Shown one piece after another: positions 1,641 through 64,000 of a stretch of DNA of 64,000 nucleotides. The translations under genes were made by a program, and so were the position numbers. Each line of letters begins with the position of its first letter. Positions within the stretch are counted from its first letter, which is position 1. Under the pieces are notes generated by a model. That model saw only the letters and a program-made list of their open reading frames with translations. It did no database searches and was not told the DNA's origin. The stretch is from the sequence record OQ603353.1; one strand, given 5' to 3'.

Positions 1641-2621
1641 TCAGTCGTCCAAGCTCTCGAAGAGATCCGCGAGGTTGGCTCGGCTGACCACCCGGACCAG
1701 CTGGTCCTGCTGGATGAGGGCGTTAGTGAACACCGGATTGCCTTGGCGATTGCGGCGCACTTCGTACATGATCTTGAAGTTGTCCCACCGGACTGCCCTG
1801 CCTTGCGTCTTGATGCCCCGGTCAGCCTCGATCACAAGGGCTCGCGTGTTGGCACTGCTGTCCGTCCACTTGACCTCCACCACGCAGCCCGGTTGCACGT
1901 CTACAAACTTGACCCCGATCGGATAGCCCCCGTTGACCTTCACGTTGTTCATCTTGAAGGCCGTGTTGGAGTGGTGCACAATGTAGTCAGCGTTGAAGTG
2001 CTTGGTCCGGGGCTTGCGTACCTCAAAGTGGTCCGGGTCATCAAGCATGAAGCCAACCACGTCTGCCGCAATGTAGGCAGTGACGTAATCCACGTCAGGA
2101 GCCGACTCGTCCAGTGTGCCAACTTGGTGGCAGATGACGCCTCCGATCCGAACCTCGCGGCGCGAATCAAGGATGACGGCAAAGGAACCGTCGCCTTGAA
2201 GGAGGGTGAACGCGTCCCGCAGGCGACGGATGACCGGCGTGGTGTCATGAAGCATTTCCTTGCCACTCCGCTTCCACTCCTTGATGAACTTCTCCGAAGG
2301 GGTCAGCGGAGCCTTGGGCAGCTTGGCGACCGTGGCCGATTGGGTCGGCATCTGCTCCGGGTGCAGGGTAAAGACGACGAGGAACGCGTAGTTGGAGGCG
2401 ATCACTTCGACCGCCTTGACCTTCTCCTTGCGACGGCGCATGACGCGCAGGACCGTCTTACGCACTGCCGCCTTATCCGTGATGGTGTGGGGGAAGAAGA
2501 TCCGAATCTCATTCTGCTTGTGCAGGGTGGTCTGTCGGACGCCCTTCAACGGCAGGTGGAAAGCCTCGCACAGGTCGGACTTGATGAAGGTGTGATTGAA
2601 GCCGGTGATTGCGTTGCTCAT
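1641..2621 (-). CDS. Hypothetical early protein (326 aa)
   Basis: Long ORF with GAAGGA RBS before ATG 2621; first gene after a sigma70-type promoter. No family recognised. Confidence 0.75.
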   Translation of the reverse strand: MSNAITGFNHTFIKSDLCEAFHLPLKGVRQTTLHKQNEIRIFFPHTITDKAAVRKTVLRVMRRRKEKVKAVEVIASNYAFLVVFTLHPEQMPTQSATVAKLPKAPLTPSEKFIKEWKRSGKEMLHDTTPVIRRLRDAFTLLQGDGSFAVILDSRREVRIGGVICHQVGTLDESAPDVDYVTAYIAADVVGFMLDDPDHFEVRKPRTKHFNADYIVHHSNTAFKMNNVKVNGGYPIGVKFVDVQPGCVVEVKWTDSSANTRALVIEADRGIKTQGRAVRWDNFKIMYEVRRNRQGNPVFTNALIQQDQLVRVVSRANLADLFESLDD

Positions 2622-2658
2622 GTGTGATCCTTCATTGGTCGGAGTGTTCCGGGAAATT

Positions 2659-2805
2659 TGCCAAGTGTGCTTGGCGAATCTGGCGTAGCGTGCAGGCACA
2701 GGGCATGACTCTACACCACTATCATACACCACCCCTAGCCGGGTGTCAAACCACCCCTGTCAGCCGTTCAGGTTCCGTTCAGGTTCGATTTGGGCACACT
2801 TGGCA
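2659..2805 (-). repeat. Early-promoter cassette copy 1 (inverted arms, GTTCAG iterations, leader)
   Basis: Shares CCACCCCTG, GCCGTTCAGGTTC and the GTGCCTG...CCAAGCACACTT leader with the copies at 17.3, 26.8 and 60.9 kb. Confidence 0.7.
2721..2749 (-). promoter_or_regulatory. Sigma70-type promoter
   Basis: TTGACA-17 bp-TATGAT on the minus strand. Confidence 0.85.
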
Positions 2806-2812
2806 GAATCTC

Positions 2813-3244
2813 TTATTCCGCAATCTCCATTTCTAGGCGTTCCTGCCACGTCTTCGGGCGGAGGGTCAGGGAGTGTGACCAGTGGCCTAGCCTCATTCGT
2901 GCCACCTCGTTAGCACCACACCCGTAAGGCACAGGCAGCGAGTTGACCCATTGGTGGAATCCCTGGGACGACTTGGCTGACTTGCCTGCCAGCTGCCTTG
3001 CCGTGAGATTGATTCCGGCGTTGAATGGCAGTGGGCAAATCCGGGTGCGATTGATGTGGTCAAGTAGCACAGTCGCAGGCATTGTCTCAACGCAATTCTG
3101 GCATGGTCGGAATCCTGTACCCACGAACTCTTCTGGAATCTGCTCCGTTTCGCACCAGCCCTCCATGCGACTGAATGCACGCACGCAGCAACTCGGATAG
3201 CCAAACCACAAGCCAAACAGAACGTACTGAGTAGACAATTCCAT
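2813..3244 (-). CDS. Conserved Cys-containing phage hypothetical protein
   Basis: GLWFGYPSCCVRAF and GTGFRPCQNC motifs, recalled from a common phage hypothetical family. Confidence 0.7.
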   Translation of the reverse strand: MELSTQYVLFGLWFGYPSCCVRAFSRMEGWCETEQIPEEFVGTGFRPCQNCVETMPATVLLDHINRTRICPLPFNAGINLTARQLAGKSAKSSQGFHQWVNSLPVPYGCGANEVARMRLGHWSHSLTLRPKTWQERLEMEIAE

Positions 3245-17249: not shown

Positions 17250-17288
17250 GATGGCTTCCTTGATTCAATAGATGCCCGAAGGCGTGAG

Positions 17289-17438
17289 ATTTCAAAGTGT
17301 GTTTGGTATGCCATAAGCGACAGGCACACTCCCACACCCCTATCATAACACAAGTCAAGTCGGGTGACTACCACTCCTGACTTTCGTTCAGCTGCCGTTC
17401 AGGTTCCGAGGGTGGTCATTTCGAGCATCCTTTGAAAA
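17289..17438 (-). repeat. Early-promoter cassette copy 2
   Basis: Conserved leader AGTGTGCCTGTCG-N6-GCA-N2-CCAAACACACTTTGAAA, GTTCAG iterations, upstream arm CATCCTTTGAAAA. Confidence 0.8.
17342..17370 (-). promoter_or_regulatory. Sigma70-type extended -10 promoter
   Basis: TAGTCA-17 bp-TATGAT with TG at -15/-14. Confidence 0.7.
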
Positions 17439-17465
17439 ATCGAGGGGTCGGTGTTCTGACCCCTC
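17434..17465 (-). terminator. Intrinsic terminator
   Basis: GAGGGGUC/GACCCCUC stem then GAUUUUU. Confidence 0.75.
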
Positions 17466-17470
17466 ACGTG

Positions 17471-26787: not shown

Positions 26788-26928
26788 TTTTCAAAGTGTG
26801 TTTGGCCTGCTCTAGACGACAGGCAGACTTTCTCACAACTACAGTATAGCACAAATCTTCTCGGTGTGCGGCCACCCCTGATTCCCGTTCAGCTGCCGTT
26901 CAGGTTCAGTTCGAGCATCCTTTGAAAA
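26788..26928 (-). repeat. Early-promoter cassette copy 3 (extended -10 TGCTATACT at 26843-26851)
   Basis: Near-identical to copy 4 over the leader and the upstream GTTCAG block. Confidence 0.85.
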
Positions 26929-26949
26929 AATCGACCCATTCGGGAAACG

Positions 26950-26983
26950 AAAAGGGGCCACCAAGATCGCTCCCGGCAGCCCC
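26950..26983 (-). terminator. Intrinsic terminator closing the modification operon
   Basis: GGGGCUGCC/GGUGGCCCC stem then UUUUCGUUU. Confidence 0.75.
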
Positions 26984-26988
26984 TAAAT

Positions 26989-37968: not shown

Positions 37969-39435
37969 TTAGTATTCGTCAGGGACAATATCCGGAGACG
38001 TGGTGGACGGCGGGGTAGTGTCGTCCTCCGTCTTGACACCGAGGCGGTTCAGGACAGCAGCACCCGCTGGGGTGTTGGCAAAGCTTTCAACCATCGCGCC
38101 CATGTTCAGGCCACCAGCAGCGCCGAACAGACCGGAGACCTTGTTGATGCCTTCGGTCGGGGTACCAGTGTTGGCGATGACCTTGACGCTTGCGCCTTCC
38201 AGCGCCTTGGCCTGTGCGATGCCGACTTCCTTGGTAGCGTTGATGCTTTCCACGCTCAGGAGGTACGTCTGATAGCCTTGGTTCTCACCGATTTCCTTGG
38301 CCAGTTCGATCTGAGTGGTGACCGGGGCACGCAGGCGTGCAGTCTCAGCGGCTGCCTCAGCTTCGCCTCGGGCCTGAATACCCTCAGCCTCACGCTGCGC
38401 CTGAGTCAGTGCTGCATCGGCCTCAAGCTCGATCTGACGCTTGTTACCTTCCGCCCGAATAACCTGCGATTCCTTCTGCGCAGTTGCGGCGATCAGGGCC
38501 GTCTTCTGCTGTGCTTCGGCGTTGATTACCGAGGTCTGACGATCTTCCTCTGCCTTGACCACACTCACTTCACGGCGAATGTCAGCGCCTCGCACTTCCT
38601 CAACCTTGCGCACTTCCATTTCGCGGGTCTTGGTGACCGCAGCTTCCTGCGAGACTTCCTGCTGGGTACGCTCCCGAGCAATACCCACAGTCTTTTCCTT
38701 CTCAGCAGTACGCTTGCCAATCGTCTCTTCCGATTCCTGACGGCGCATTTCCACTTCCTGCTGGGCTTCGATTTCCACCAGCGAAGCAGTGCGCAGGTTG
38801 CGTGCGACCTCAGTACGGCTTTCGGATTCGATCTGAGAAATCTTCTTTGCCATGATGTTGGCAATGACTTCCTGACCCGGCGCATCCTTAATGTCCATCA
38901 ACTCGATGGACTTGACGCTCTTGACGCCCCACGCCGGAAGCTGCTGCTGTACGTCCTCAGTGAAAGCCTTACCGAAGGTGCTACGCTCGGTCATGATTTC
39001 GTTAATGTCGTAGGTCGCCAGCATCGAACGCGCTGCACCCTTTACGATGGATTCCAGCTGGGAGGTCAGTTCCTCAAAGTTCTCAACGCTCTGCGCCGCC
39101 ACGTCCGAATCAGCGATCTGGAAGAAGGCTTCCACTTCGATACGGAACGGGGTCCGATCCTTATCGTATGCCTCGTAGTCGTTCAGGCGAACGCTGAACA
39201 TGGTAGTCGGCAGGATGCGGCGAGTCATACCGATGCGCGGGAACCATTCCGGCCACTTGTAGTAGACGTTACCTGCATCCTTGTCCTTGCCGTAGCTGAC
39301 GGTAGCCTTGGCTTGCTGGACAATGTGTACTTCGTTGGTGGGGACAACAGTGCGGCGACCGAATGCCCAAAGGCAAATGATCGCAAGCAGTGCAAGGATG
39401 GCGAGCACTGCGATACCGATGACGATGATTCCCAT
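37969..39435 (-). CDS. SPFH/Band 7 (flotillin-like) membrane protein
   Basis: N-terminal TM, RRTVVPTNEVHIVQ, SPFH core and long A/E-rich coiled coil. Confidence 0.9.
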   Translation of the reverse strand: MGIIVIGIAVLAILALLAIICLWAFGRRTVVPTNEVHIVQQAKATVSYGKDKDAGNVYYKWPEWFPRIGMTRRILPTTMFSVRLNDYEAYDKDRTPFRIEVEAFFQIADSDVAAQSVENFEELTSQLESIVKGAARSMLATYDINEIMTERSTFGKAFTEDVQQQLPAWGVKSVKSIELMDIKDAPGQEVIANIMAKKISQIESESRTEVARNLRTASLVEIEAQQEVEMRRQESEETIGKRTAEKEKTVGIARERTQQEVSQEAAVTKTREMEVRKVEEVRGADIRREVSVVKAEEDRQTSVINAEAQQKTALIAATAQKESQVIRAEGNKRQIELEADAALTQAQREAEGIQARGEAEAAAETARLRAPVTTQIELAKEIGENQGYQTYLLSVESINATKEVGIAQAKALEGASVKVIANTGTPTEGINKVSGLFGAAGGLNMGAMVESFANTPAGAAVLNRLGVKTEDDTTPPSTTSPDIVPDEY

Positions 39436-40875: not shown

Positions 40876-41826
40876 TCATTTGCGGATACCTACGAGTACG
40901 TTGGCCTTGATACTTTCGAGCACATCCTCATCATCCGTATCGTCTTCATCCCATGTAAGGACGGGATCGAGTTGCTCGAAATCGTTGGCATCGTAATCAC
41001 AACGCCACGCATCGACCTGAGCGAATCCCGCATCGCGCAACATATCCGTTAGCTCCGGTTCAGAGAAGTAGCGCTGACAGAATGGATTCTTGATCTTGAC
41101 CGATACGACCACACGCCCATCGACCTTGATGGAAATGTTACTGAACTCGTCAATGTTGTTAGAGATTGCCCGATCGTAGTACGACTTGACGCGGGCAACT
41201 ACCGTTACATTGGAGTACCGAGTGTTGCTGGCGAGGTTCTTGCTGACCAGCCAGCGGTACATGGGAGTGTAACAGTCTACATGGAATTCTTGGGTGGAGA
41301 CACGTCCATTCATACGTTCATCAGGGGATAGCGCCGTGGCATAGCCATCCGAGCAGAAATCCATGATGAAGATACCACCTTTCTTGGTGGCCGAGAATGC
41401 CGAGTTGATGAAGCCTTGTACGCCAGCGCGAGTGACGATGCCGCCCTTGTCCATATCACATACGGAACTCGGCGAGTAATAGTGGGCGGTCACAATGTCC
41501 CACTGCTGCTTGAAAACGTGCTGCGTAATATCGCGCACTTGGATGATGCCGGGATTGCCTGCGGACAGAGTGCCATCAGTGCCCGAATACTTGAGGCCCT
41601 GCACAGGCCATGCCTTCTTGAAGTAATCGGCATGTTTGCTGTGTGCACCGGAGAGAAGCTCCAGCAGTGAGGATGCGCGCGGACGCATTTGGAATGCGAT
41701 ATGAGCGAAGGCATGCGCCTCCTGCATCTTGTACCCTTCGCTCCGATTGTAGATGGCTTGGTATAGCTCACTGAAATCGTACAGGTGATGCAGCTTCATG
41801 TTGATTGTTTTGCGCGGACCTTTCAT
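40876..41826 (-). CDS. Class I SAM-dependent methyltransferase
   Basis: LYQAIY, LLELLSG (motif I-like), DIT...WDIVT, TKKGGIFIMDF, RYFSEPELTDMLRDAGF. Confidence 0.75.
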   Translation of the reverse strand: MKGPRKTINMKLHHLYDFSELYQAIYNRSEGYKMQEAHAFAHIAFQMRPRASSLLELLSGAHSKHADYFKKAWPVQGLKYSGTDGTLSAGNPGIIQVRDITQHVFKQQWDIVTAHYYSPSSVCDMDKGGIVTRAGVQGFINSAFSATKKGGIFIMDFCSDGYATALSPDERMNGRVSTQEFHVDCYTPMYRWLVSKNLASNTRYSNVTVVARVKSYYDRAISNNIDEFSNISIKVDGRVVVSVKIKNPFCQRYFSEPELTDMLRDAGFAQVDAWRCDYDANDFEQLDPVLTWDEDDTDDEDVLESIKANVLVGIRK

Positions 41827-41883
41827 TCCTTATCCTCGTTGTTTGTCTTTCCAAAGTGGAGAGGTTTCCCTCCCCACGAATAG

Positions 41884-60878: not shown

Positions 60879-60903
60879 TGCATTATCTCCGATGAGTGCG
60901 TTA

Positions 60904-61044
60904 TTTTCAAAGTGTGTTTGGCGTGCTGCATACGACAGGCACACTACTCCACACGTACATTATAGCACAAGTAAATCGGGGTGCACGCCACCCCTGATTC
61001 CCGTTAAGCTGCCGTTCAGGTTCAGTTCGAGCACCCTTTGAAAA
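60904..61044 (-). repeat. Early-promoter cassette copy 4 (extended -10 TGCTATAAT at 60959-60967)
   Basis: Near-identical to copy 3. Confidence 0.85.
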
Positions 61045-61067
61045 ATCGAGGGGTCGGAACACCCTCG
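61041..61067 (-). terminator. Intrinsic terminator after the helicase
   Basis: CGAGGG/CCCUCG stem then AUUUUU. Confidence 0.7.
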
Positions 61068-61069
61068 TT

Positions 61070-62959
61070 TCAGGGCCTATCCTTTAGCCCTTTCTTCATC
61101 TTCTGGAGCTTGGCGTCTAGCTCTTTCATTTCCTTGCCTATCGTCTTATCAGCTGGGTTGAGTTTCAGCTTGCGCTTTAGGTAGACGATGCGATTACTCA
61201 TCTTGCGGAGTTCCTCTGGCATGGAAGCCCTGTACTTGGCTACCCGGCTAGCGGTCTGCGTGCGAATCTTGTGCATGTACTCTTCGGGCGTGCCACGAGT
61301 CTCCTTGGCTTCCTCAGATCGTGCATTGTTGACGCTCCACTCTGCATAGTTGCCCAGCGTCTCCATCGTTTCGTGATCCAGAATCGGGAAGTGATTCATT
61401 CTCTTGTGGATCATCTTGGCTAGACCCAGCGTTGGCACGATGGCGAGCATGGCATCCTTGCTTTCGTGATTGCGCATATTGCCACGCCCCAAACTCTGGA
61501 TCGTCTTGGCCACCACGTAATCCTGCTGCGGATCATACTCCGGCATATACGCTTGCATCAACGAGCGCATTACAGGATCAGGATTCACGCCTGCCAAGAA
61601 CACGACGGCGTTGGTACCGATGAAATCGTTGCGCCCTTCCACACGTCCAGTAGAGAACTTACGGAACAGCTTCTCGTTTACCTCCACGTCTTCCAGCGGT
61701 CCCTTGTTCATCAGCAGGAGCGCCTTGTCCTTACATTTGTGTAGCTTACGGAATCGACTGACAAGCTTCTCCGACATTTCCAATTGCCATGCCAGCGGGT
61801 CCAGCTTGAAGTTGGCTTCCTTCAACTTCTTGTGTAGGCGTTGCAGCTTAGGGCCTGCCTTAGCACGGTTGTTCTTGCCCGGATTGCGTAGGAATTCTGA
61901 GAAGGTCTTCAAATCCCGAGACGTTAGGTTCTGTGCGTCTAGCTCTGCCTTGATCGAAGTAATGTGTTCGCGTGGCACCAACAGGTTGTTGGTATTCATC
62001 GACTTGGACGGCATCGAGCTTGTGTTGAGCAATGGCACGATGGTGACTCGGGAATAGTTCTCCAGAATCTTGGCGTTGGCGTTGGCATAGAAGCCTGTAC
62101 CCAGCTGATCGTCGATGAAAGGAATGGTGACATTGCGTACCGTGCCTGCTGCTTCCTTTTCCATCAGGTAGAACATTTGACTGTCCTCAAAATCCGCTGA
62201 CAGAATATATACCGACTTGAAGCCTTGGAAGGGATACGATGGCAGGGTGATACGCATGAACTGTCGCTTCCCTTTGGCTCCCGTCTTCATAGCGCCAAAC
62301 ACCTTCATGCGTCCGTTAGCCCTTTCGGGATCAATGTCGTGCAGAAGCTGCTTGACTTGTAGAACGTACTTCTTCGGCCCCATTGCCTTAATGAGAGCTT
62401 TGCGTTCCGAGGGCTTCACTTCCTCGTTGACAGCCACCTCAAAGATGTTGGTTCCGTTGAGGCGCCTAGTGACGAACAGCTTGTCTAGCAAATGCTTGAC
62501 CGTTGCGTTGAATTCAATCTTGTCGGTCATAGTCACCCACTTGCGCGCCTCGTCAAACAGCACAGTGGTATGCTCAAAAGTTGGATGGGATCGTAGTTGC
62601 AGGAAGGTGGCGTGCGTGATGAACATGATGCTACCGTGCTTGTACGGATTCCCTACGTACAAGCCATTGCCCTTCTTCCAGTTCAGCACCGAATTGACGA
62701 TACTCATCACATTGTCGTTGGTACTGGAATCGCTACCACTGGCAATGTAGTGCAGGAAGGAATGCTGGGATTCTGGCAGCACTCGCTGCACACTCTTGAC
62801 CGTCTGCTCCAGCAATTTCTTGGTGGGAGCGACGTACAGAATATATCCGGGTTTCTTTTTCGCGTGGCCTGCCTCCACATGCTTCCGCATGAATTCCACA
62901 GCAGCCCTAGTTTTGCCCAATCCCGGAGGAGCGGACACAAAGTTGACAGTCAGGGTCAT
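61070..62959 (-). CDS. SF2-type helicase, possible origin-binding/initiator protein
   Basis: APPGLGKT (Walker A), YVAPTKKLLEQ (Ia), FITHATF, LFDEA (Walker B), LSAD (III), QSLGRGNMR (VI). Confidence 0.8.
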   Translation of the reverse strand: MTLTVNFVSAPPGLGKTRAAVEFMRKHVEAGHAKKKPGYILYVAPTKKLLEQTVKSVQRVLPESQHSFLHYIASGSDSSTNDNVMSIVNSVLNWKKGNGLYVGNPYKHGSIMFITHATFLQLRSHPTFEHTTVLFDEARKWVTMTDKIEFNATVKHLLDKLFVTRRLNGTNIFEVAVNEEVKPSERKALIKAMGPKKYVLQVKQLLHDIDPERANGRMKVFGAMKTGAKGKRQFMRITLPSYPFQGFKSVYILSADFEDSQMFYLMEKEAAGTVRNVTIPFIDDQLGTGFYANANAKILENYSRVTIVPLLNTSSMPSKSMNTNNLLVPREHITSIKAELDAQNLTSRDLKTFSEFLRNPGKNNRAKAGPKLQRLHKKLKEANFKLDPLAWQLEMSEKLVSRFRKLHKCKDKALLLMNKGPLEDVEVNEKLFRKFSTGRVEGRNDFIGTNAVVFLAGVNPDPVMRSLMQAYMPEYDPQQDYVVAKTIQSLGRGNMRNHESKDAMLAIVPTLGLAKMIHKRMNHFPILDHETMETLGNYAEWSVNNARSEEAKETRGTPEEYMHKIRTQTASRVAKYRASMPEELRKMSNRIVYLKRKLKLNPADKTIGKEMKELDAKLQKMKKGLKDRP

Positions 62960-63038
62960 AGTGCGTATTTACGCTGTAACGTTACAGTACCTTTACAGGA
63001 TGCCAAAACAGGGCGTTTCGGTAAAAATACTTCCGCCT

Positions 63039-63228
63039 TTAGACACGCCTGCGTTACAGTAAAATCTGAGCAGTCTGAGGGGAAACCGCCGCAGGGGTCG
63101 AAAACGCAGAAACGCGGATCCTTCAATCCCCAGCAATAAAAAACGCGGAGACTTGATGTTTTGACAGAAATTTTATGTAACGTACCCTCCCCTAGAGATA
63201 TTAGACACGCCACCGTTACAGTAAAATC
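63039..63228. repeat. 28-bp direct repeat pair (63039-63066 and 63201-63228)
   Basis: TTAGACACGCCTGCGTTACAGTAAAATC vs TTAGACACGCCACCGTTACAGTAAAATC (2 mismatches). Confidence 0.9.
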
Positions 63229-63242
63229 GTCTTTTCAGGTGA

Positions 63243-63282
63243 AAACCCCACCCCAAAGGGGCCAGCCTTTGGGGTGGGGTTT
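63243..63282. repeat. Perfect 17-bp inverted repeat with 6-nt spacer
   Basis: AAACCCCACCCCAAAGG-GGCCAG-CCTTTGGGGTGGGGTTT. Confidence 0.9.
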
Positions 63283-63837
63283 CGTACCCAGGTACACATC
63301 AGGAATCTCTAGCTCTACGTTTCTATGAAATCCCCACTAAGGCACAAACCTAGGAATGGCTCCGGCCTCCGGCCTTCTCCATTCGTACAGGTTGTTCTTA
63401 GGGGGAATGCCTTTTCGCTTACGCGATCCTCCCTGATTCAGCCTCTAGAGAACGAAATCCTCTAAAATCACCGCGTTTTTCGTAGTTTACCCTGTAGCTG
63501 GTAAGCCGGAGGCCCAAACTCCGGGTAGTTTAGGGTCCAACCTCCTAAAAATGGTTCCAGAACCTACATTTTCCTGCCTGCGTTTCCGGCAGTTCTGCCC
63601 TTACGGAACCACCCCGCACGGGTCAGGATCGACCCAGGAGGGTCAGAATGGGTCCAGAAGGCCAAAATCGCCTAGGATCGAGCATATCTACGCTGGATGC
63701 ACGCTGTTTTCTCGCAATTTGAGTGTACGAGGGCGATAGAACCCCTCAGCCTACCATCACCTGCTCTGGCGTTGTCCGGGTTGGGGTGGAAATTGTGTCA
63801 TAACAACTTACGGACAACTTCAACTGAGGAACACGTT

Positions 63838-64000
63838 GTGAATCTCATTCCAACTGTTTTTGCTTCACAGAAGCCGTCCCTTCCCAGCGCTGAGGTTGCT
63901 TTCGCTTCCTTTGGCTGCGAAGGCTGCGGCAACCACTTCTCGGTGCAGGCCAGCATGAGCACTCCGTTCTGCGTTCTGTGTGGTTGCGACAATACCACTC
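63838..64000 (+). CDS. Zinc-ribbon protein, 5' part (runs off the window)
   Basis: GAGGA RBS, GTG 63838, MNLIPTVF...FGCEGCGNHFSVQASMSTPFCVLCGCDNTT; not in the ORF track because there is no stop. Confidence 0.7.
   Translation, partial: MNLIPTVFASQKPSLPSAEVAFASFGCEGCGNHFSVQASMSTPFCVLCGCDNTT

What the first reader, a model, noticed from the sequence alone, without database searches (positions are those of the whole stretch)
2659..2805. Each promoter cassette is bracketed by inverted arms 141-150 bp apart that co-vary within a copy
Seen: copy 4 has TTTTCAAAGTGTG (60904) and CACCCTTTGAAAA (61032), 12/13 complementary, span 141. Copy 3 has 26788 and CATCCTTTGAAAA 26916, span 141. Copy 2 has 17289 and 17426, span 150. 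In copy 1 both arms have changed together to a perfect 12-bp pair, TGCCAAGTGTGC (2659) and GCACACTTGGCA (2794), span 147. In copies 2-4 the upstream arm lies at or just past the 3' end of a terminator. Known: T4-type phages have mobile promoter/stem-loop cassettes (PeSL) that shuffle modules. Inference: matched arms suggest an invertible promoter, a MITE-like mobile promoter, DNA looping by a dimeric regulator, or a long processing stem in read-through RNA.
Basis: partly seen in the sequence, partly recalled or inferred. Interest (0 to 1): 0.66.

Follow-up and report, generated by a model that had tools for sequence, protein, structure and literature searches.

The report
Matched arms bracketing phage promoter cassettes
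Four repeated stop-and-start gene-control cassettes of a giant Xanthomonas phage are each flanked by a matched inverted pair of short sequences, which most likely pair up in RNA that reads through the cassette; they are not a flip-switch or a jumping element, and their purpose is still untested.

Summary
All four arm pairs sit at the stated coordinates and spans. The window is a 227-kb Xanthomonas jumbo phage (99.8% Ep026), with its genes on the minus strand.

Each cassette reads: terminator (absent in copy 1), upstream arm, two CTGAACGG direct repeats 11 bp apart, sigma-70-type promoter, leader hairpin, downstream arm, ribosome site. This is a PeSL-like composite terminator/promoter cassette. 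Copy 4 lies exactly at a gene-replacement boundary between sister phages.

I found more distant relatives in public assemblies. The copy-1 orthologue (L119) has a third arm version that is again complementary (16 of 17). Six of 18 arm pairs now show changes on both sides.

The pattern is not universal:
- A copy-2 orthologue (L121) carries two uncompensated mismatches.
- Two cassettes of another relative, and a fifth promoter in this genome, lack the upstream arm.

Cassettes without a terminator keep a strong compensated helix. Those behind terminators have weaker arms.

Best reading (about 0.5): a long-range RNA helix in read-through transcripts that encloses the internal promoter and masks the leader, for processing or insulation. 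DNA looping by a regulator remains possible (about 0.2). An invertible switch and a MITE are not supported.

The parts
2794..2812 (-). Copy 1 upstream arm (core 2794-2805; extension to 2812). It starts 8 nt after the stop codon of gene 2813-3244, with no terminator between.
2653..2670 (-). Copy 1 downstream arm (core 2659-2670), in the 5' leader, 37 nt before the ATG at 2621
2721..2786 (-). Copy 1 direct repeats (2764-2786) and promoter TTGACA-17-TATGAT (2749-2721)
17426..17466 (-). Copy 2 intrinsic terminator (17466-17441) and upstream arm (17438-17426). The arm begins inside the terminator's T-run.
17342..17406 (-). Copy 2 direct repeats (17384-17406) and promoter with TG-extended -10 (17370-17342). 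An 11-bp insert lies between the arm and the repeats.
17289..17329 (-). Copy 2 leader hairpin (17306-17329) and downstream arm (17289-17301)
26916..26984 (-). Copy 3 terminator (26984-26953) and upstream arm (26928-26916)
26843..26907 (-). Copy 3 direct repeats (26885-26907) and extended -10 promoter (-10 hexamer 26848-26843)
26788..26828 (-). Copy 3 leader hairpin (26805-26828; stem compensated relative to copy 4) and downstream arm (26788-26800)
61032..61067 (-). Copy 4 terminator hairpin (61047-61067) and upstream arm (61032-61044)
60959..61023 (-). Copy 4 direct repeats (61001-61023) and extended -10 promoter (-10 hexamer 60964-60959)
60904..60944 (-). Copy 4 leader hairpin (60921-60944) and downstream arm (60904-60916)
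60883..61079 (-). Whole copy-4 cassette. It is a 197-bp block 99.5% identical in PhiXhv-15/-12, while the DNA on both sides is non-homologous or carries an insert.

Best explanation
Each cassette is a composite unit lying between the stop codon of one gene and the ribosome site of the next. It holds an optional intrinsic terminator, a probable activator site (two 8-nt direct repeats one helical turn apart, at a fixed 36-37 bp from the -10), a host sigma-70-type promoter, and a structured 5' leader.

The downstream arm is a conserved block of that leader. The upstream arm is its complement, placed ahead of the promoter.

RNA that starts at the cassette's own promoter lacks the upstream arm, so its leader stays open. 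RNA that reads through from the operon above contains both arms. I infer that they pair into a long-range helix that loops out the roughly 115-125-nt promoter region and masks the leader block. In the L119 relative the helix also masks the ribosome site.

The most likely use is to mark read-through RNA for double-strand-specific processing (host RNase III type), or to insulate the downstream gene from read-through expression.

Shown: the inverted repeat, its compensatory evolution, and the predicted pairing. Inferred: that the pairing is in RNA, and what it does.
For: Compensatory evolution:
- Copy 1 differs from copies 2-4 at two arm pairs on both sides. Its other arm changes all increase the match.
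- The copy-1 orthologue in a relative with 60% topoisomerase identity (L119) has the same spacings (68 and 51 nt). Its arms are a third version with two further adjacent double changes and a perfect 14-bp run, 16 of 17 overall.
- With L119 added, 6 of 18 pairs have changes on both sides. The covariation score is 0.235 against 0.072 in shuffles (0 of 500 reach it) and at most 0.132 in slid controls.

Predicted pairing and terminators:
- Predicted pairing probability is about 1.0 in copy 1 and in L119, the two cassettes with no terminator and so obligatory read-through. It is 0.8 in copy 3.
- Cassettes that sit behind a terminator have weaker arms, 12-14 of 18. This fits relaxed selection where read-through is rare.

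Other support:
- The only SNP in 300 bp of copy 3 in PhiXhv-12/-16 turns an arm mismatch into a G-C pair.
- The alignment-based consensus fold contains the arm helix. The neighbouring leader hairpin shows RNA-type compensation.
- A single-specificity DNA-binding protein would not explain three arm versions, two of them in one genome.
Against: - Among copies 2-4 the arm blocks are nearly invariant (19/20 and 17/18), while the leader hairpin drifts with compensation. That is how a protein site behaves.
- Arm duplexes of copies 2-4 are weak (-8.6 to -10.4 kcal/mol). Predicted pairing is about 0 in copies 2 and 4 and in L121.
- The copy-2 orthologue L121 has a copy-1-type upstream arm with a copy-2-type downstream arm. 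That leaves two uncompensated mismatches at exactly the co-varying positions.
- The cassettes L118 and L122 of another relative, and the fifth promoter here, keep the downstream block or the promoter core without any complementary upstream arm.
- The inter-arm spacers are 115, 115, 124 and 125 bp. They differ by about one helical turn, which hints at DNA geometry.
- No RNA data exist. The runs found are kept only as contigs.
Confidence: 0.5

Rival explanations
1. The arms are two inverted operator sites for a multimeric DNA-binding regulator, phage- or host-encoded. It clamps or loops the promoter from about -87 to +43 to shut it off or time it, as in gal OE/OI.
For: - The arm blocks are invariant among copies 2-4 and 17-20 bp long.
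- The motif occurs only at these promoters.
- Inter-arm spacers of 115, 115, 124 and 125 bp keep the helical phase within about 1.5 bp, through two independent indels of 9-11 bp (own counts).
- The cassette clearly carries another protein-type site, the direct repeats, at fixed spacing.
Against: - There are three different arm versions with changes mirrored on both sides, two of them in one genome. That would need several specificities.
- No HTH_3, H-NS or similar regulator was detected in the phage.
- Some cassettes work without an upstream arm.
Confidence: 0.2
2. The arms have no present function. They are a relic of an inverted duplication of the leader block, kept alike by gene conversion or templated repair between cassettes and arms.
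For: - Cassettes recombine: copy 4 sits at a mosaic boundary, and PhiXhv-15 has a 20-bp leader duplication there.
- L121 looks like a chimera of arm types.
- Some cassettes lack the upstream arm.
Against: Complementarity survived about 35% divergence of the rest of the cassette, and again in L119 with new compensated bases. Templated correction across a 115-125-nt spacer is not expected to be efficient.
Confidence: 0.12
3. Invertible promoter switch: site-specific inversion between the arms, as in fimS or hin.
For: Inverted repeats flank a promoter.
Against: - Orientation is the same at all four sites in 5 GenBank genomes and the window.
- Contigs of four runs cross copy 1 colinearly with no joints.
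- There is no resolvase. The only integrase-like hit is a type IB topoisomerase.
- All neighbouring genes are on one strand, so a flipped promoter would drive nothing.
Confidence: 0.03
4. MITE-like or Correia-like mobile promoter element, with the arms as terminal inverted repeats.
For: The size (about 150 bp), the inverted ends and the internal promoter resemble Correia elements.
Against: - Homology between copies continues beyond both arms: copies 3 and 4 share the leader to the ribosome site, and copies 2 and 4 share the terminator.
- There is no target-site duplication.
- The same four positions are occupied in every relative.
- No transposase was seen.
Confidence: 0.03

Closest known systems
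PeSL (promoter-early stem-loop) cassettes of T4-type phages (PMC2839356, PMC4122927)
   Same: - A composite of a stem-loop terminator and a strong sigma-70-type early promoter, lying between the upstream stop codon and the downstream Shine-Dalgarno site.
- Repeated within the genome.
- Found at replacement and indel boundaries between sister phages (copy 4 here).
   Different: - Only 4-5 copies, 10-35 kb apart, rather than about 50 in hyperplastic regions.
- An unrelated phage lineage (phiRSL1/Sarumanvirus-like by helicase similarity).
- Extra conserved parts: direct repeats, a leader hairpin, and the bracketing inverted arms, which the PeSL passages I read (PMC2839356 section 13; PMC4122927 introduction) do not mention.
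Promoter-adjacent RNase III sites of phage T7 (my own knowledge, not checked here)
   Same: Read-through polycistronic RNA is cut next to internal promoters, so that both kinds of transcript give similar mRNAs.
   Different: T7 sites are local hairpins downstream of the promoter. Here the helix would be long-range and would enclose the promoter. Cleavage is untested.
Correia elements of Neisseria (my own knowledge)
   Same: About 100-150 bp with inverted ends. They can carry promoters and form RNase III-cleaved stems when transcribed.
   Different: Correia elements are true MITEs with TA duplication and 26-bp terminal repeats. Here the arms are not the ends of the repeat unit, and there is no mobility signature.
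Paired operators flanking a promoter (gal OE/OI type looping; my own knowledge)
   Same: Two like sites lie upstream and downstream of the start site, roughly 115-130 bp apart and near an integral number of helical turns.
   Different: No regulator is known, and the arm sequences co-vary within single cassettes.

Membership tests
PeSL-like composite terminator/promoter cassette | Sigma-70-type promoter plus stem-loop terminator in one short intergenic unit, from stop codon to Shine-Dalgarno site | tested here: met
   Promoter and terminator scans and direct reading. Copy 1 lacks the terminator.
PeSL-like composite terminator/promoter cassette | Lies at indel or replacement boundaries between closely related phages | tested here: met
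   Met for copy 4 only. The helicase is replaced by a 37%-identical allele up to the cassette edge, and a 227-bp insert sits at the other edge.
PeSL-like composite terminator/promoter cassette | Many copies concentrated in hyperplastic regions of T4-type phages | tested here: not met
   4 full copies and 1 partial copy in 228 kb. The phage is not T4-type.
Invertible promoter switch | Both orientations present in the population | tested here: not met
   Single orientation in the window plus 5 GenBank genomes and in contigs of 4 runs. Contigs cannot exclude rare variants.
Invertible promoter switch | Cognate serine or tyrosine recombinase | tested here: not met
   PF00239: none. The PF00589 hit is a type IB topoisomerase.
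MITE / Correia-like element | Inverted repeats are the termini of the repeated unit, with a target-site duplication | tested here: not met
   Homology extends beyond both arms, and the flanks show no duplication.
RNase III processing stem | Roughly two turns of double-stranded RNA present in a real transcript | tested here: inconclusive
   Copy 1 has 18 bp with one bulge. L119 has 14 perfect bp, then one mismatch and 2 further pairs. Copies 2-4 have only 9 contiguous bp. No transcript data.
RNase III processing stem | Cleavage in vivo or in vitro | not testable with these tools
   Only assembled contigs of public runs were available. The phage has no RNase III gene of its own.
Looping operator pair | A protein that binds both sites | not testable with these tools
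   No candidate was found by HTH_3 or H-NS searches.
Looping operator pair | Helical phasing of the two sites conserved | tested here: inconclusive
   Spacers of 115, 115, 124 and 125 bp. This could arise by chance roughly 1 time in 10.

The most novel reading that the evidence does not exclude
The arms form an 'origin-sensing' RNA device. The complement of a leader block is placed ahead of an internal promoter, so that transcripts born at that promoter expose the leader and ribosome site. Read-through transcripts fold it away and are processed or silenced. Each operon's first gene would then answer only to its own promoter.
Probability: 0.3. Interest if true: 0.65.

Novelty: new variant of a known kind. 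Interest (0 to 1): 0.45.

Why it matters
Composite terminator/promoter cassettes are known drivers of module shuffling in T4-type phages. Here a similar unit appears in an unrelated jumbo-phage lineage.

It carries an added, evolutionarily maintained long-range complementarity around the promoter. If that helix forms in RNA, it gives a simple way for a phage to tell read-through transcripts from promoter-initiated ones.

It is directly testable with arm and compensatory mutations. The cassettes also give defined early promoters and leaders for engineering these biocontrol-candidate Xanthomonas phages.

Tried and rejected
- IMG/VR pattern scan gave only unrelated hits. One of them, L018, shares the 23-nt repeat core but not the cassette.
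- Protein-guided scans of IMG/VR and of JGI metagenomes, and a strict cassette pattern on metagenomes, found nothing.
- Rfam gave no family, at gathering score on the whole window or at E up to 1 on copy 3.
- The phage collection holds only five near-identical relatives, which gave almost no arm variation.
- Logan relatives at 97% identity have an identical copy-1 cassette.
- Distant relatives (BcepSaruman, phiRSL1, BCSR5) have their own repeated promoter cassettes, with hairpins next to or inside the promoter. They have no homologous arms.
- A third exact copy of the copy-1 arm lies in coding DNA just outside the window, and I judged it chance.
- The poxvirus-type topoisomerase pentamer occurs in the upstream arms of copies 2-4. 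I noted and dropped this, because copy 1 and all downstream arms lack it.
- The MAFFT alignment A4 misplaced the L119 arm, so I did not use it for counts. I used an anchored register table instead.
- Read laying could show only contigs, so it gave no transcript ends and no rare variants.

Full report
WHAT THE DNA IS

The window matches Xanthomonas phage Ep026 and Erwinia phage Ep032 at 99.8%, and PhiXhv-15, -16 and -12 at 97-99%. These are 227-229-kb virulent jumbo myoviruses. Their paper mentions no promoters, terminators or repeats (PMC13340338). All genes near the finding are on the minus strand, so I read the cassettes on that strand.

THE OBSERVATION

- Watson-Crick matches in the 13-nt arms are 10 (copy 2), 11 (copy 3) and 12 (copy 4).
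- Copy 1 is a perfect 12-mer. It extends to about 18 bp with one bulged C and one G-T.
- In an 18-position common register the counts are 14 (+1 G-U), 12, 13 and 12. Unrelated sequence would give about 4.5.
- Shuffles gave an 11-of-12 pair in 2 of 60 trials per cassette, and never a perfect 12-mer.
- The arm words occur only at the cassettes in the whole PhiXhv-15 genome. The exceptions are coding or near-match chance hits.

ANATOMY

Alignment of the copies gives this order:
- The upstream gene's stop codon.
- An intrinsic terminator. Copies 2 and 3 were found by the scan. Copy 4 has a 9-nt loop, seen by reading. Copy 1 has none.
- The upstream arm. In copies 2-4 it starts in the T-run.
- Two 8-nt direct repeats with 11-bp period, at a fixed 36-37 bp from the -10 in all five promoters.
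- A sigma-70-type promoter. This is TTGACA-17-TATGAT in copy 1 and a TG-extended -10 in copies 2-4.
- A leader hairpin whose stem is compensated between copies.
- The downstream arm, then the ribosome site and ATG.

The genome holds exactly four such cassettes plus one partial copy. The partial copy faces the other way, lies outside the window, and has the repeats and a near-consensus promoter but no arms and no hairpin.

THE ARMS ARE NOT THE ENDS OF THE REPEAT UNIT
- Copies 3 and 4 stay alike for 22 nt beyond the downstream arm.
- Copies 2 and 4 share the terminator beyond the upstream arm.
- There is no target duplication.
- The same four sites are occupied in every relative.

This rejects a MITE.

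NO SIGN OF INVERSION
- Orientation is constant in the window and all five GenBank relatives.
- Contigs from four public runs cross copy 1 colinearly, without joints. These are contigs only, so rare forms cannot be excluded.
- The phage has no resolvase. Its one integrase-like hit is a type IB topoisomerase.

CASSETTES AND MOSAICISM

Against PhiXhv-15 and -12, window 60883-61079 (copy 4) is a 99.5% identical island.
- On one side the helicase gene (61079-63581) is replaced by an allele of 37% protein identity.
- On the other side PhiXhv-15 has a 227-bp insert flanked by a 20-bp duplication of the leader's 3' end.

This is the behaviour described for PeSL cassettes of T4-type phages. The more distant relatives BcepSaruman and phiRSL1 have their own repeated promoter cassettes. 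Theirs have hairpins beside or inside the promoter and no homologous arms.

NEW COMPARATIVE DATA

The public phage collection gave almost no arm variation. The one exception is an A-to-G SNP in copy 3 of PhiXhv-12/-16, which repairs an arm mismatch. IMG/VR and JGI scans found nothing.

Homologues of the topoisomerase and ligase led to assemblies of intermediate relatives.

- L119 (topoisomerase 60% identical) carries the orthologue of copy 1.
  - The spacings are the same (68 nt from arm to -10, 51 nt from -10 to arm), and there is no terminator.
  - The arms differ from copy 1 on both sides and are complementary at 16 of 17 positions, with a 14-bp perfect run. The downstream arm ends 3 nt before the ATG, so it covers the ribosome site.
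  - With this sequence added, 6 of 18 arm pairs show changes on both sides, and one pair has three Watson-Crick types. The covariation score is 0.235 against 0.072 in shuffles (0 of 500) and at most 0.132 when the partner columns are slid.
- L121 (ligase 77%) is the orthologue of copy 2.
  - It has the same 78/40 spacings and a terminator with a U-tract.
  - Its upstream arm is of the copy-1 type while its downstream arm is of the copy-2 type. Two mismatches sit exactly at the co-varying positions, and predicted pairing is nil.
- L118 and L122 come from one further phage. They keep the repeats, the promoter, a compensated leader hairpin and the downstream block, but have no complementary upstream arm.
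- L123 has only a 7-bp match at the equivalent places.

WEIGHING THE MECHANISMS

Three arm versions keep their complementarity, and two of them sit in one genome. That is what base pairing predicts. A protein of one specificity would not predict it.

The single-stranded molecule that holds both arms is RNA reading through from the operon above. The two cassettes without a terminator (copy 1 and L119) are the ones where read-through is unavoidable. They have the strongest, compensated helices: duplex energy -21.3 kcal/mol for copy 1, and predicted pairing about 1.0 in both. Cassettes shielded by terminators have weaker arms and pairing probabilities between 0 and 0.8. I therefore favour a long-range RNA helix that encloses the internal promoter and masks the leader in read-through RNA only.

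Its purpose is inferred, not shown. It could be processing by a double-strand-specific nuclease, or insulation of the first gene from read-through expression (L119's masked ribosome site points that way).

Against this reading:
- The arm blocks of copies 2-4 are as invariant as the presumed protein site.
- L121 is uncompensated.
- Some cassettes do without the upstream arm.
- The inter-arm spacers (115, 115, 124, 125 bp) differ by about one helical turn, which a DNA-looping regulator would explain.

No regulator candidate for the arms was found. A weak OmpR-type winged-helix protein may serve the direct repeats.

I put RNA pairing at about 0.5, paired DNA operators at 0.2, a functionless relic at 0.12, and inversion and MITE at 0.03 each. 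The rest goes to unlisted readings such as single-stranded DNA structures.

KNOWN OR NEW

No Rfam family matches, and the phages' paper does not describe the cassettes. As a kind, the cassette is PeSL-like. The bracketing, co-varying arms are an addition for which I found no description.

My data move that reading from DNA sites towards RNA pairing.

Noticed in passing
PhiXhv-15 38595-38700 (+), L003:1480-1650; Ep026 about 23.1 kb: A fifth promoter has the same direct-repeat core and TTGACA-17-CATAAT. It faces the opposite way and has no arms and no leader hairpin. Its -10 context resembles the repeated phiRSL1 promoters.
   Followed up: partly
window 61079-63581 and 60883-60903: The helicase next to copy 4 is replaced by a 37%-identical allele in PhiXhv-12/-15, while the cassette stays identical. 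PhiXhv-15 also has a 227-bp insert (a small extra ORF) flanked by a 20-bp duplication of the leader end.
   Followed up: partly
window 1293, 1599, 6906, 13816, 23010, 36982, 48709 (minus strand): A second promoter-like word, CCTGTAAATA (one mismatch allowed), occurs 18 times in the genome, always on the strand of the downstream gene. It recalls T4 late promoters and is probably a phage-specific middle or late promoter class.
   Followed up: partly
Ep026 about 41276-41845 (L109:1219-1788): A 189-aa ORF matches the OmpR/PhoB winged-helix domain nearly end to end but below cut-off (22 bits, cut-off 26.2). It is a candidate binder of the 11-bp-spaced direct repeats.
   Followed up: partly
L018:3125-3190 (IMG/VR contig): An unrelated viral contig carries the identical 23-nt repeat core plus a third repeat, directly beside three DnaA-box-like words in a long non-coding stretch. 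The repeat may be the site of a widespread protein.
   Followed up: no
Ep026 about 174099-176105 (L108:466-2472): The phage encodes a 668-aa protein with a eukaryote/poxvirus-type topoisomerase IB catalytic core (70.6 bits).
   Followed up: partly
window 62960-63900: A roughly 900-bp divergent intergenic region lies upstream of the helicase. It holds repeated words (28-nt repeats at 63039 and 63201; several GATTTCTAAC-like units in PhiXhv-15). It may be an origin or a regulatory hub.
   Followed up: no
window 1641-2699: GenBank relatives annotate the gene after copy 1 from a GTG inside the leader (352 aa). The ATG at 2621, with a ribosome site, is more plausible (326 aa). This gene is hypervariable: 81% protein identity in relatives that are 97% identical overall.
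   Followed up: partly
window 17250-17290; L121, L118, L122 leaders: Copy-2-type leaders carry a small conserved GC hairpin with a UUCG-like loop between the downstream arm and the ribosome site.
   Followed up: no
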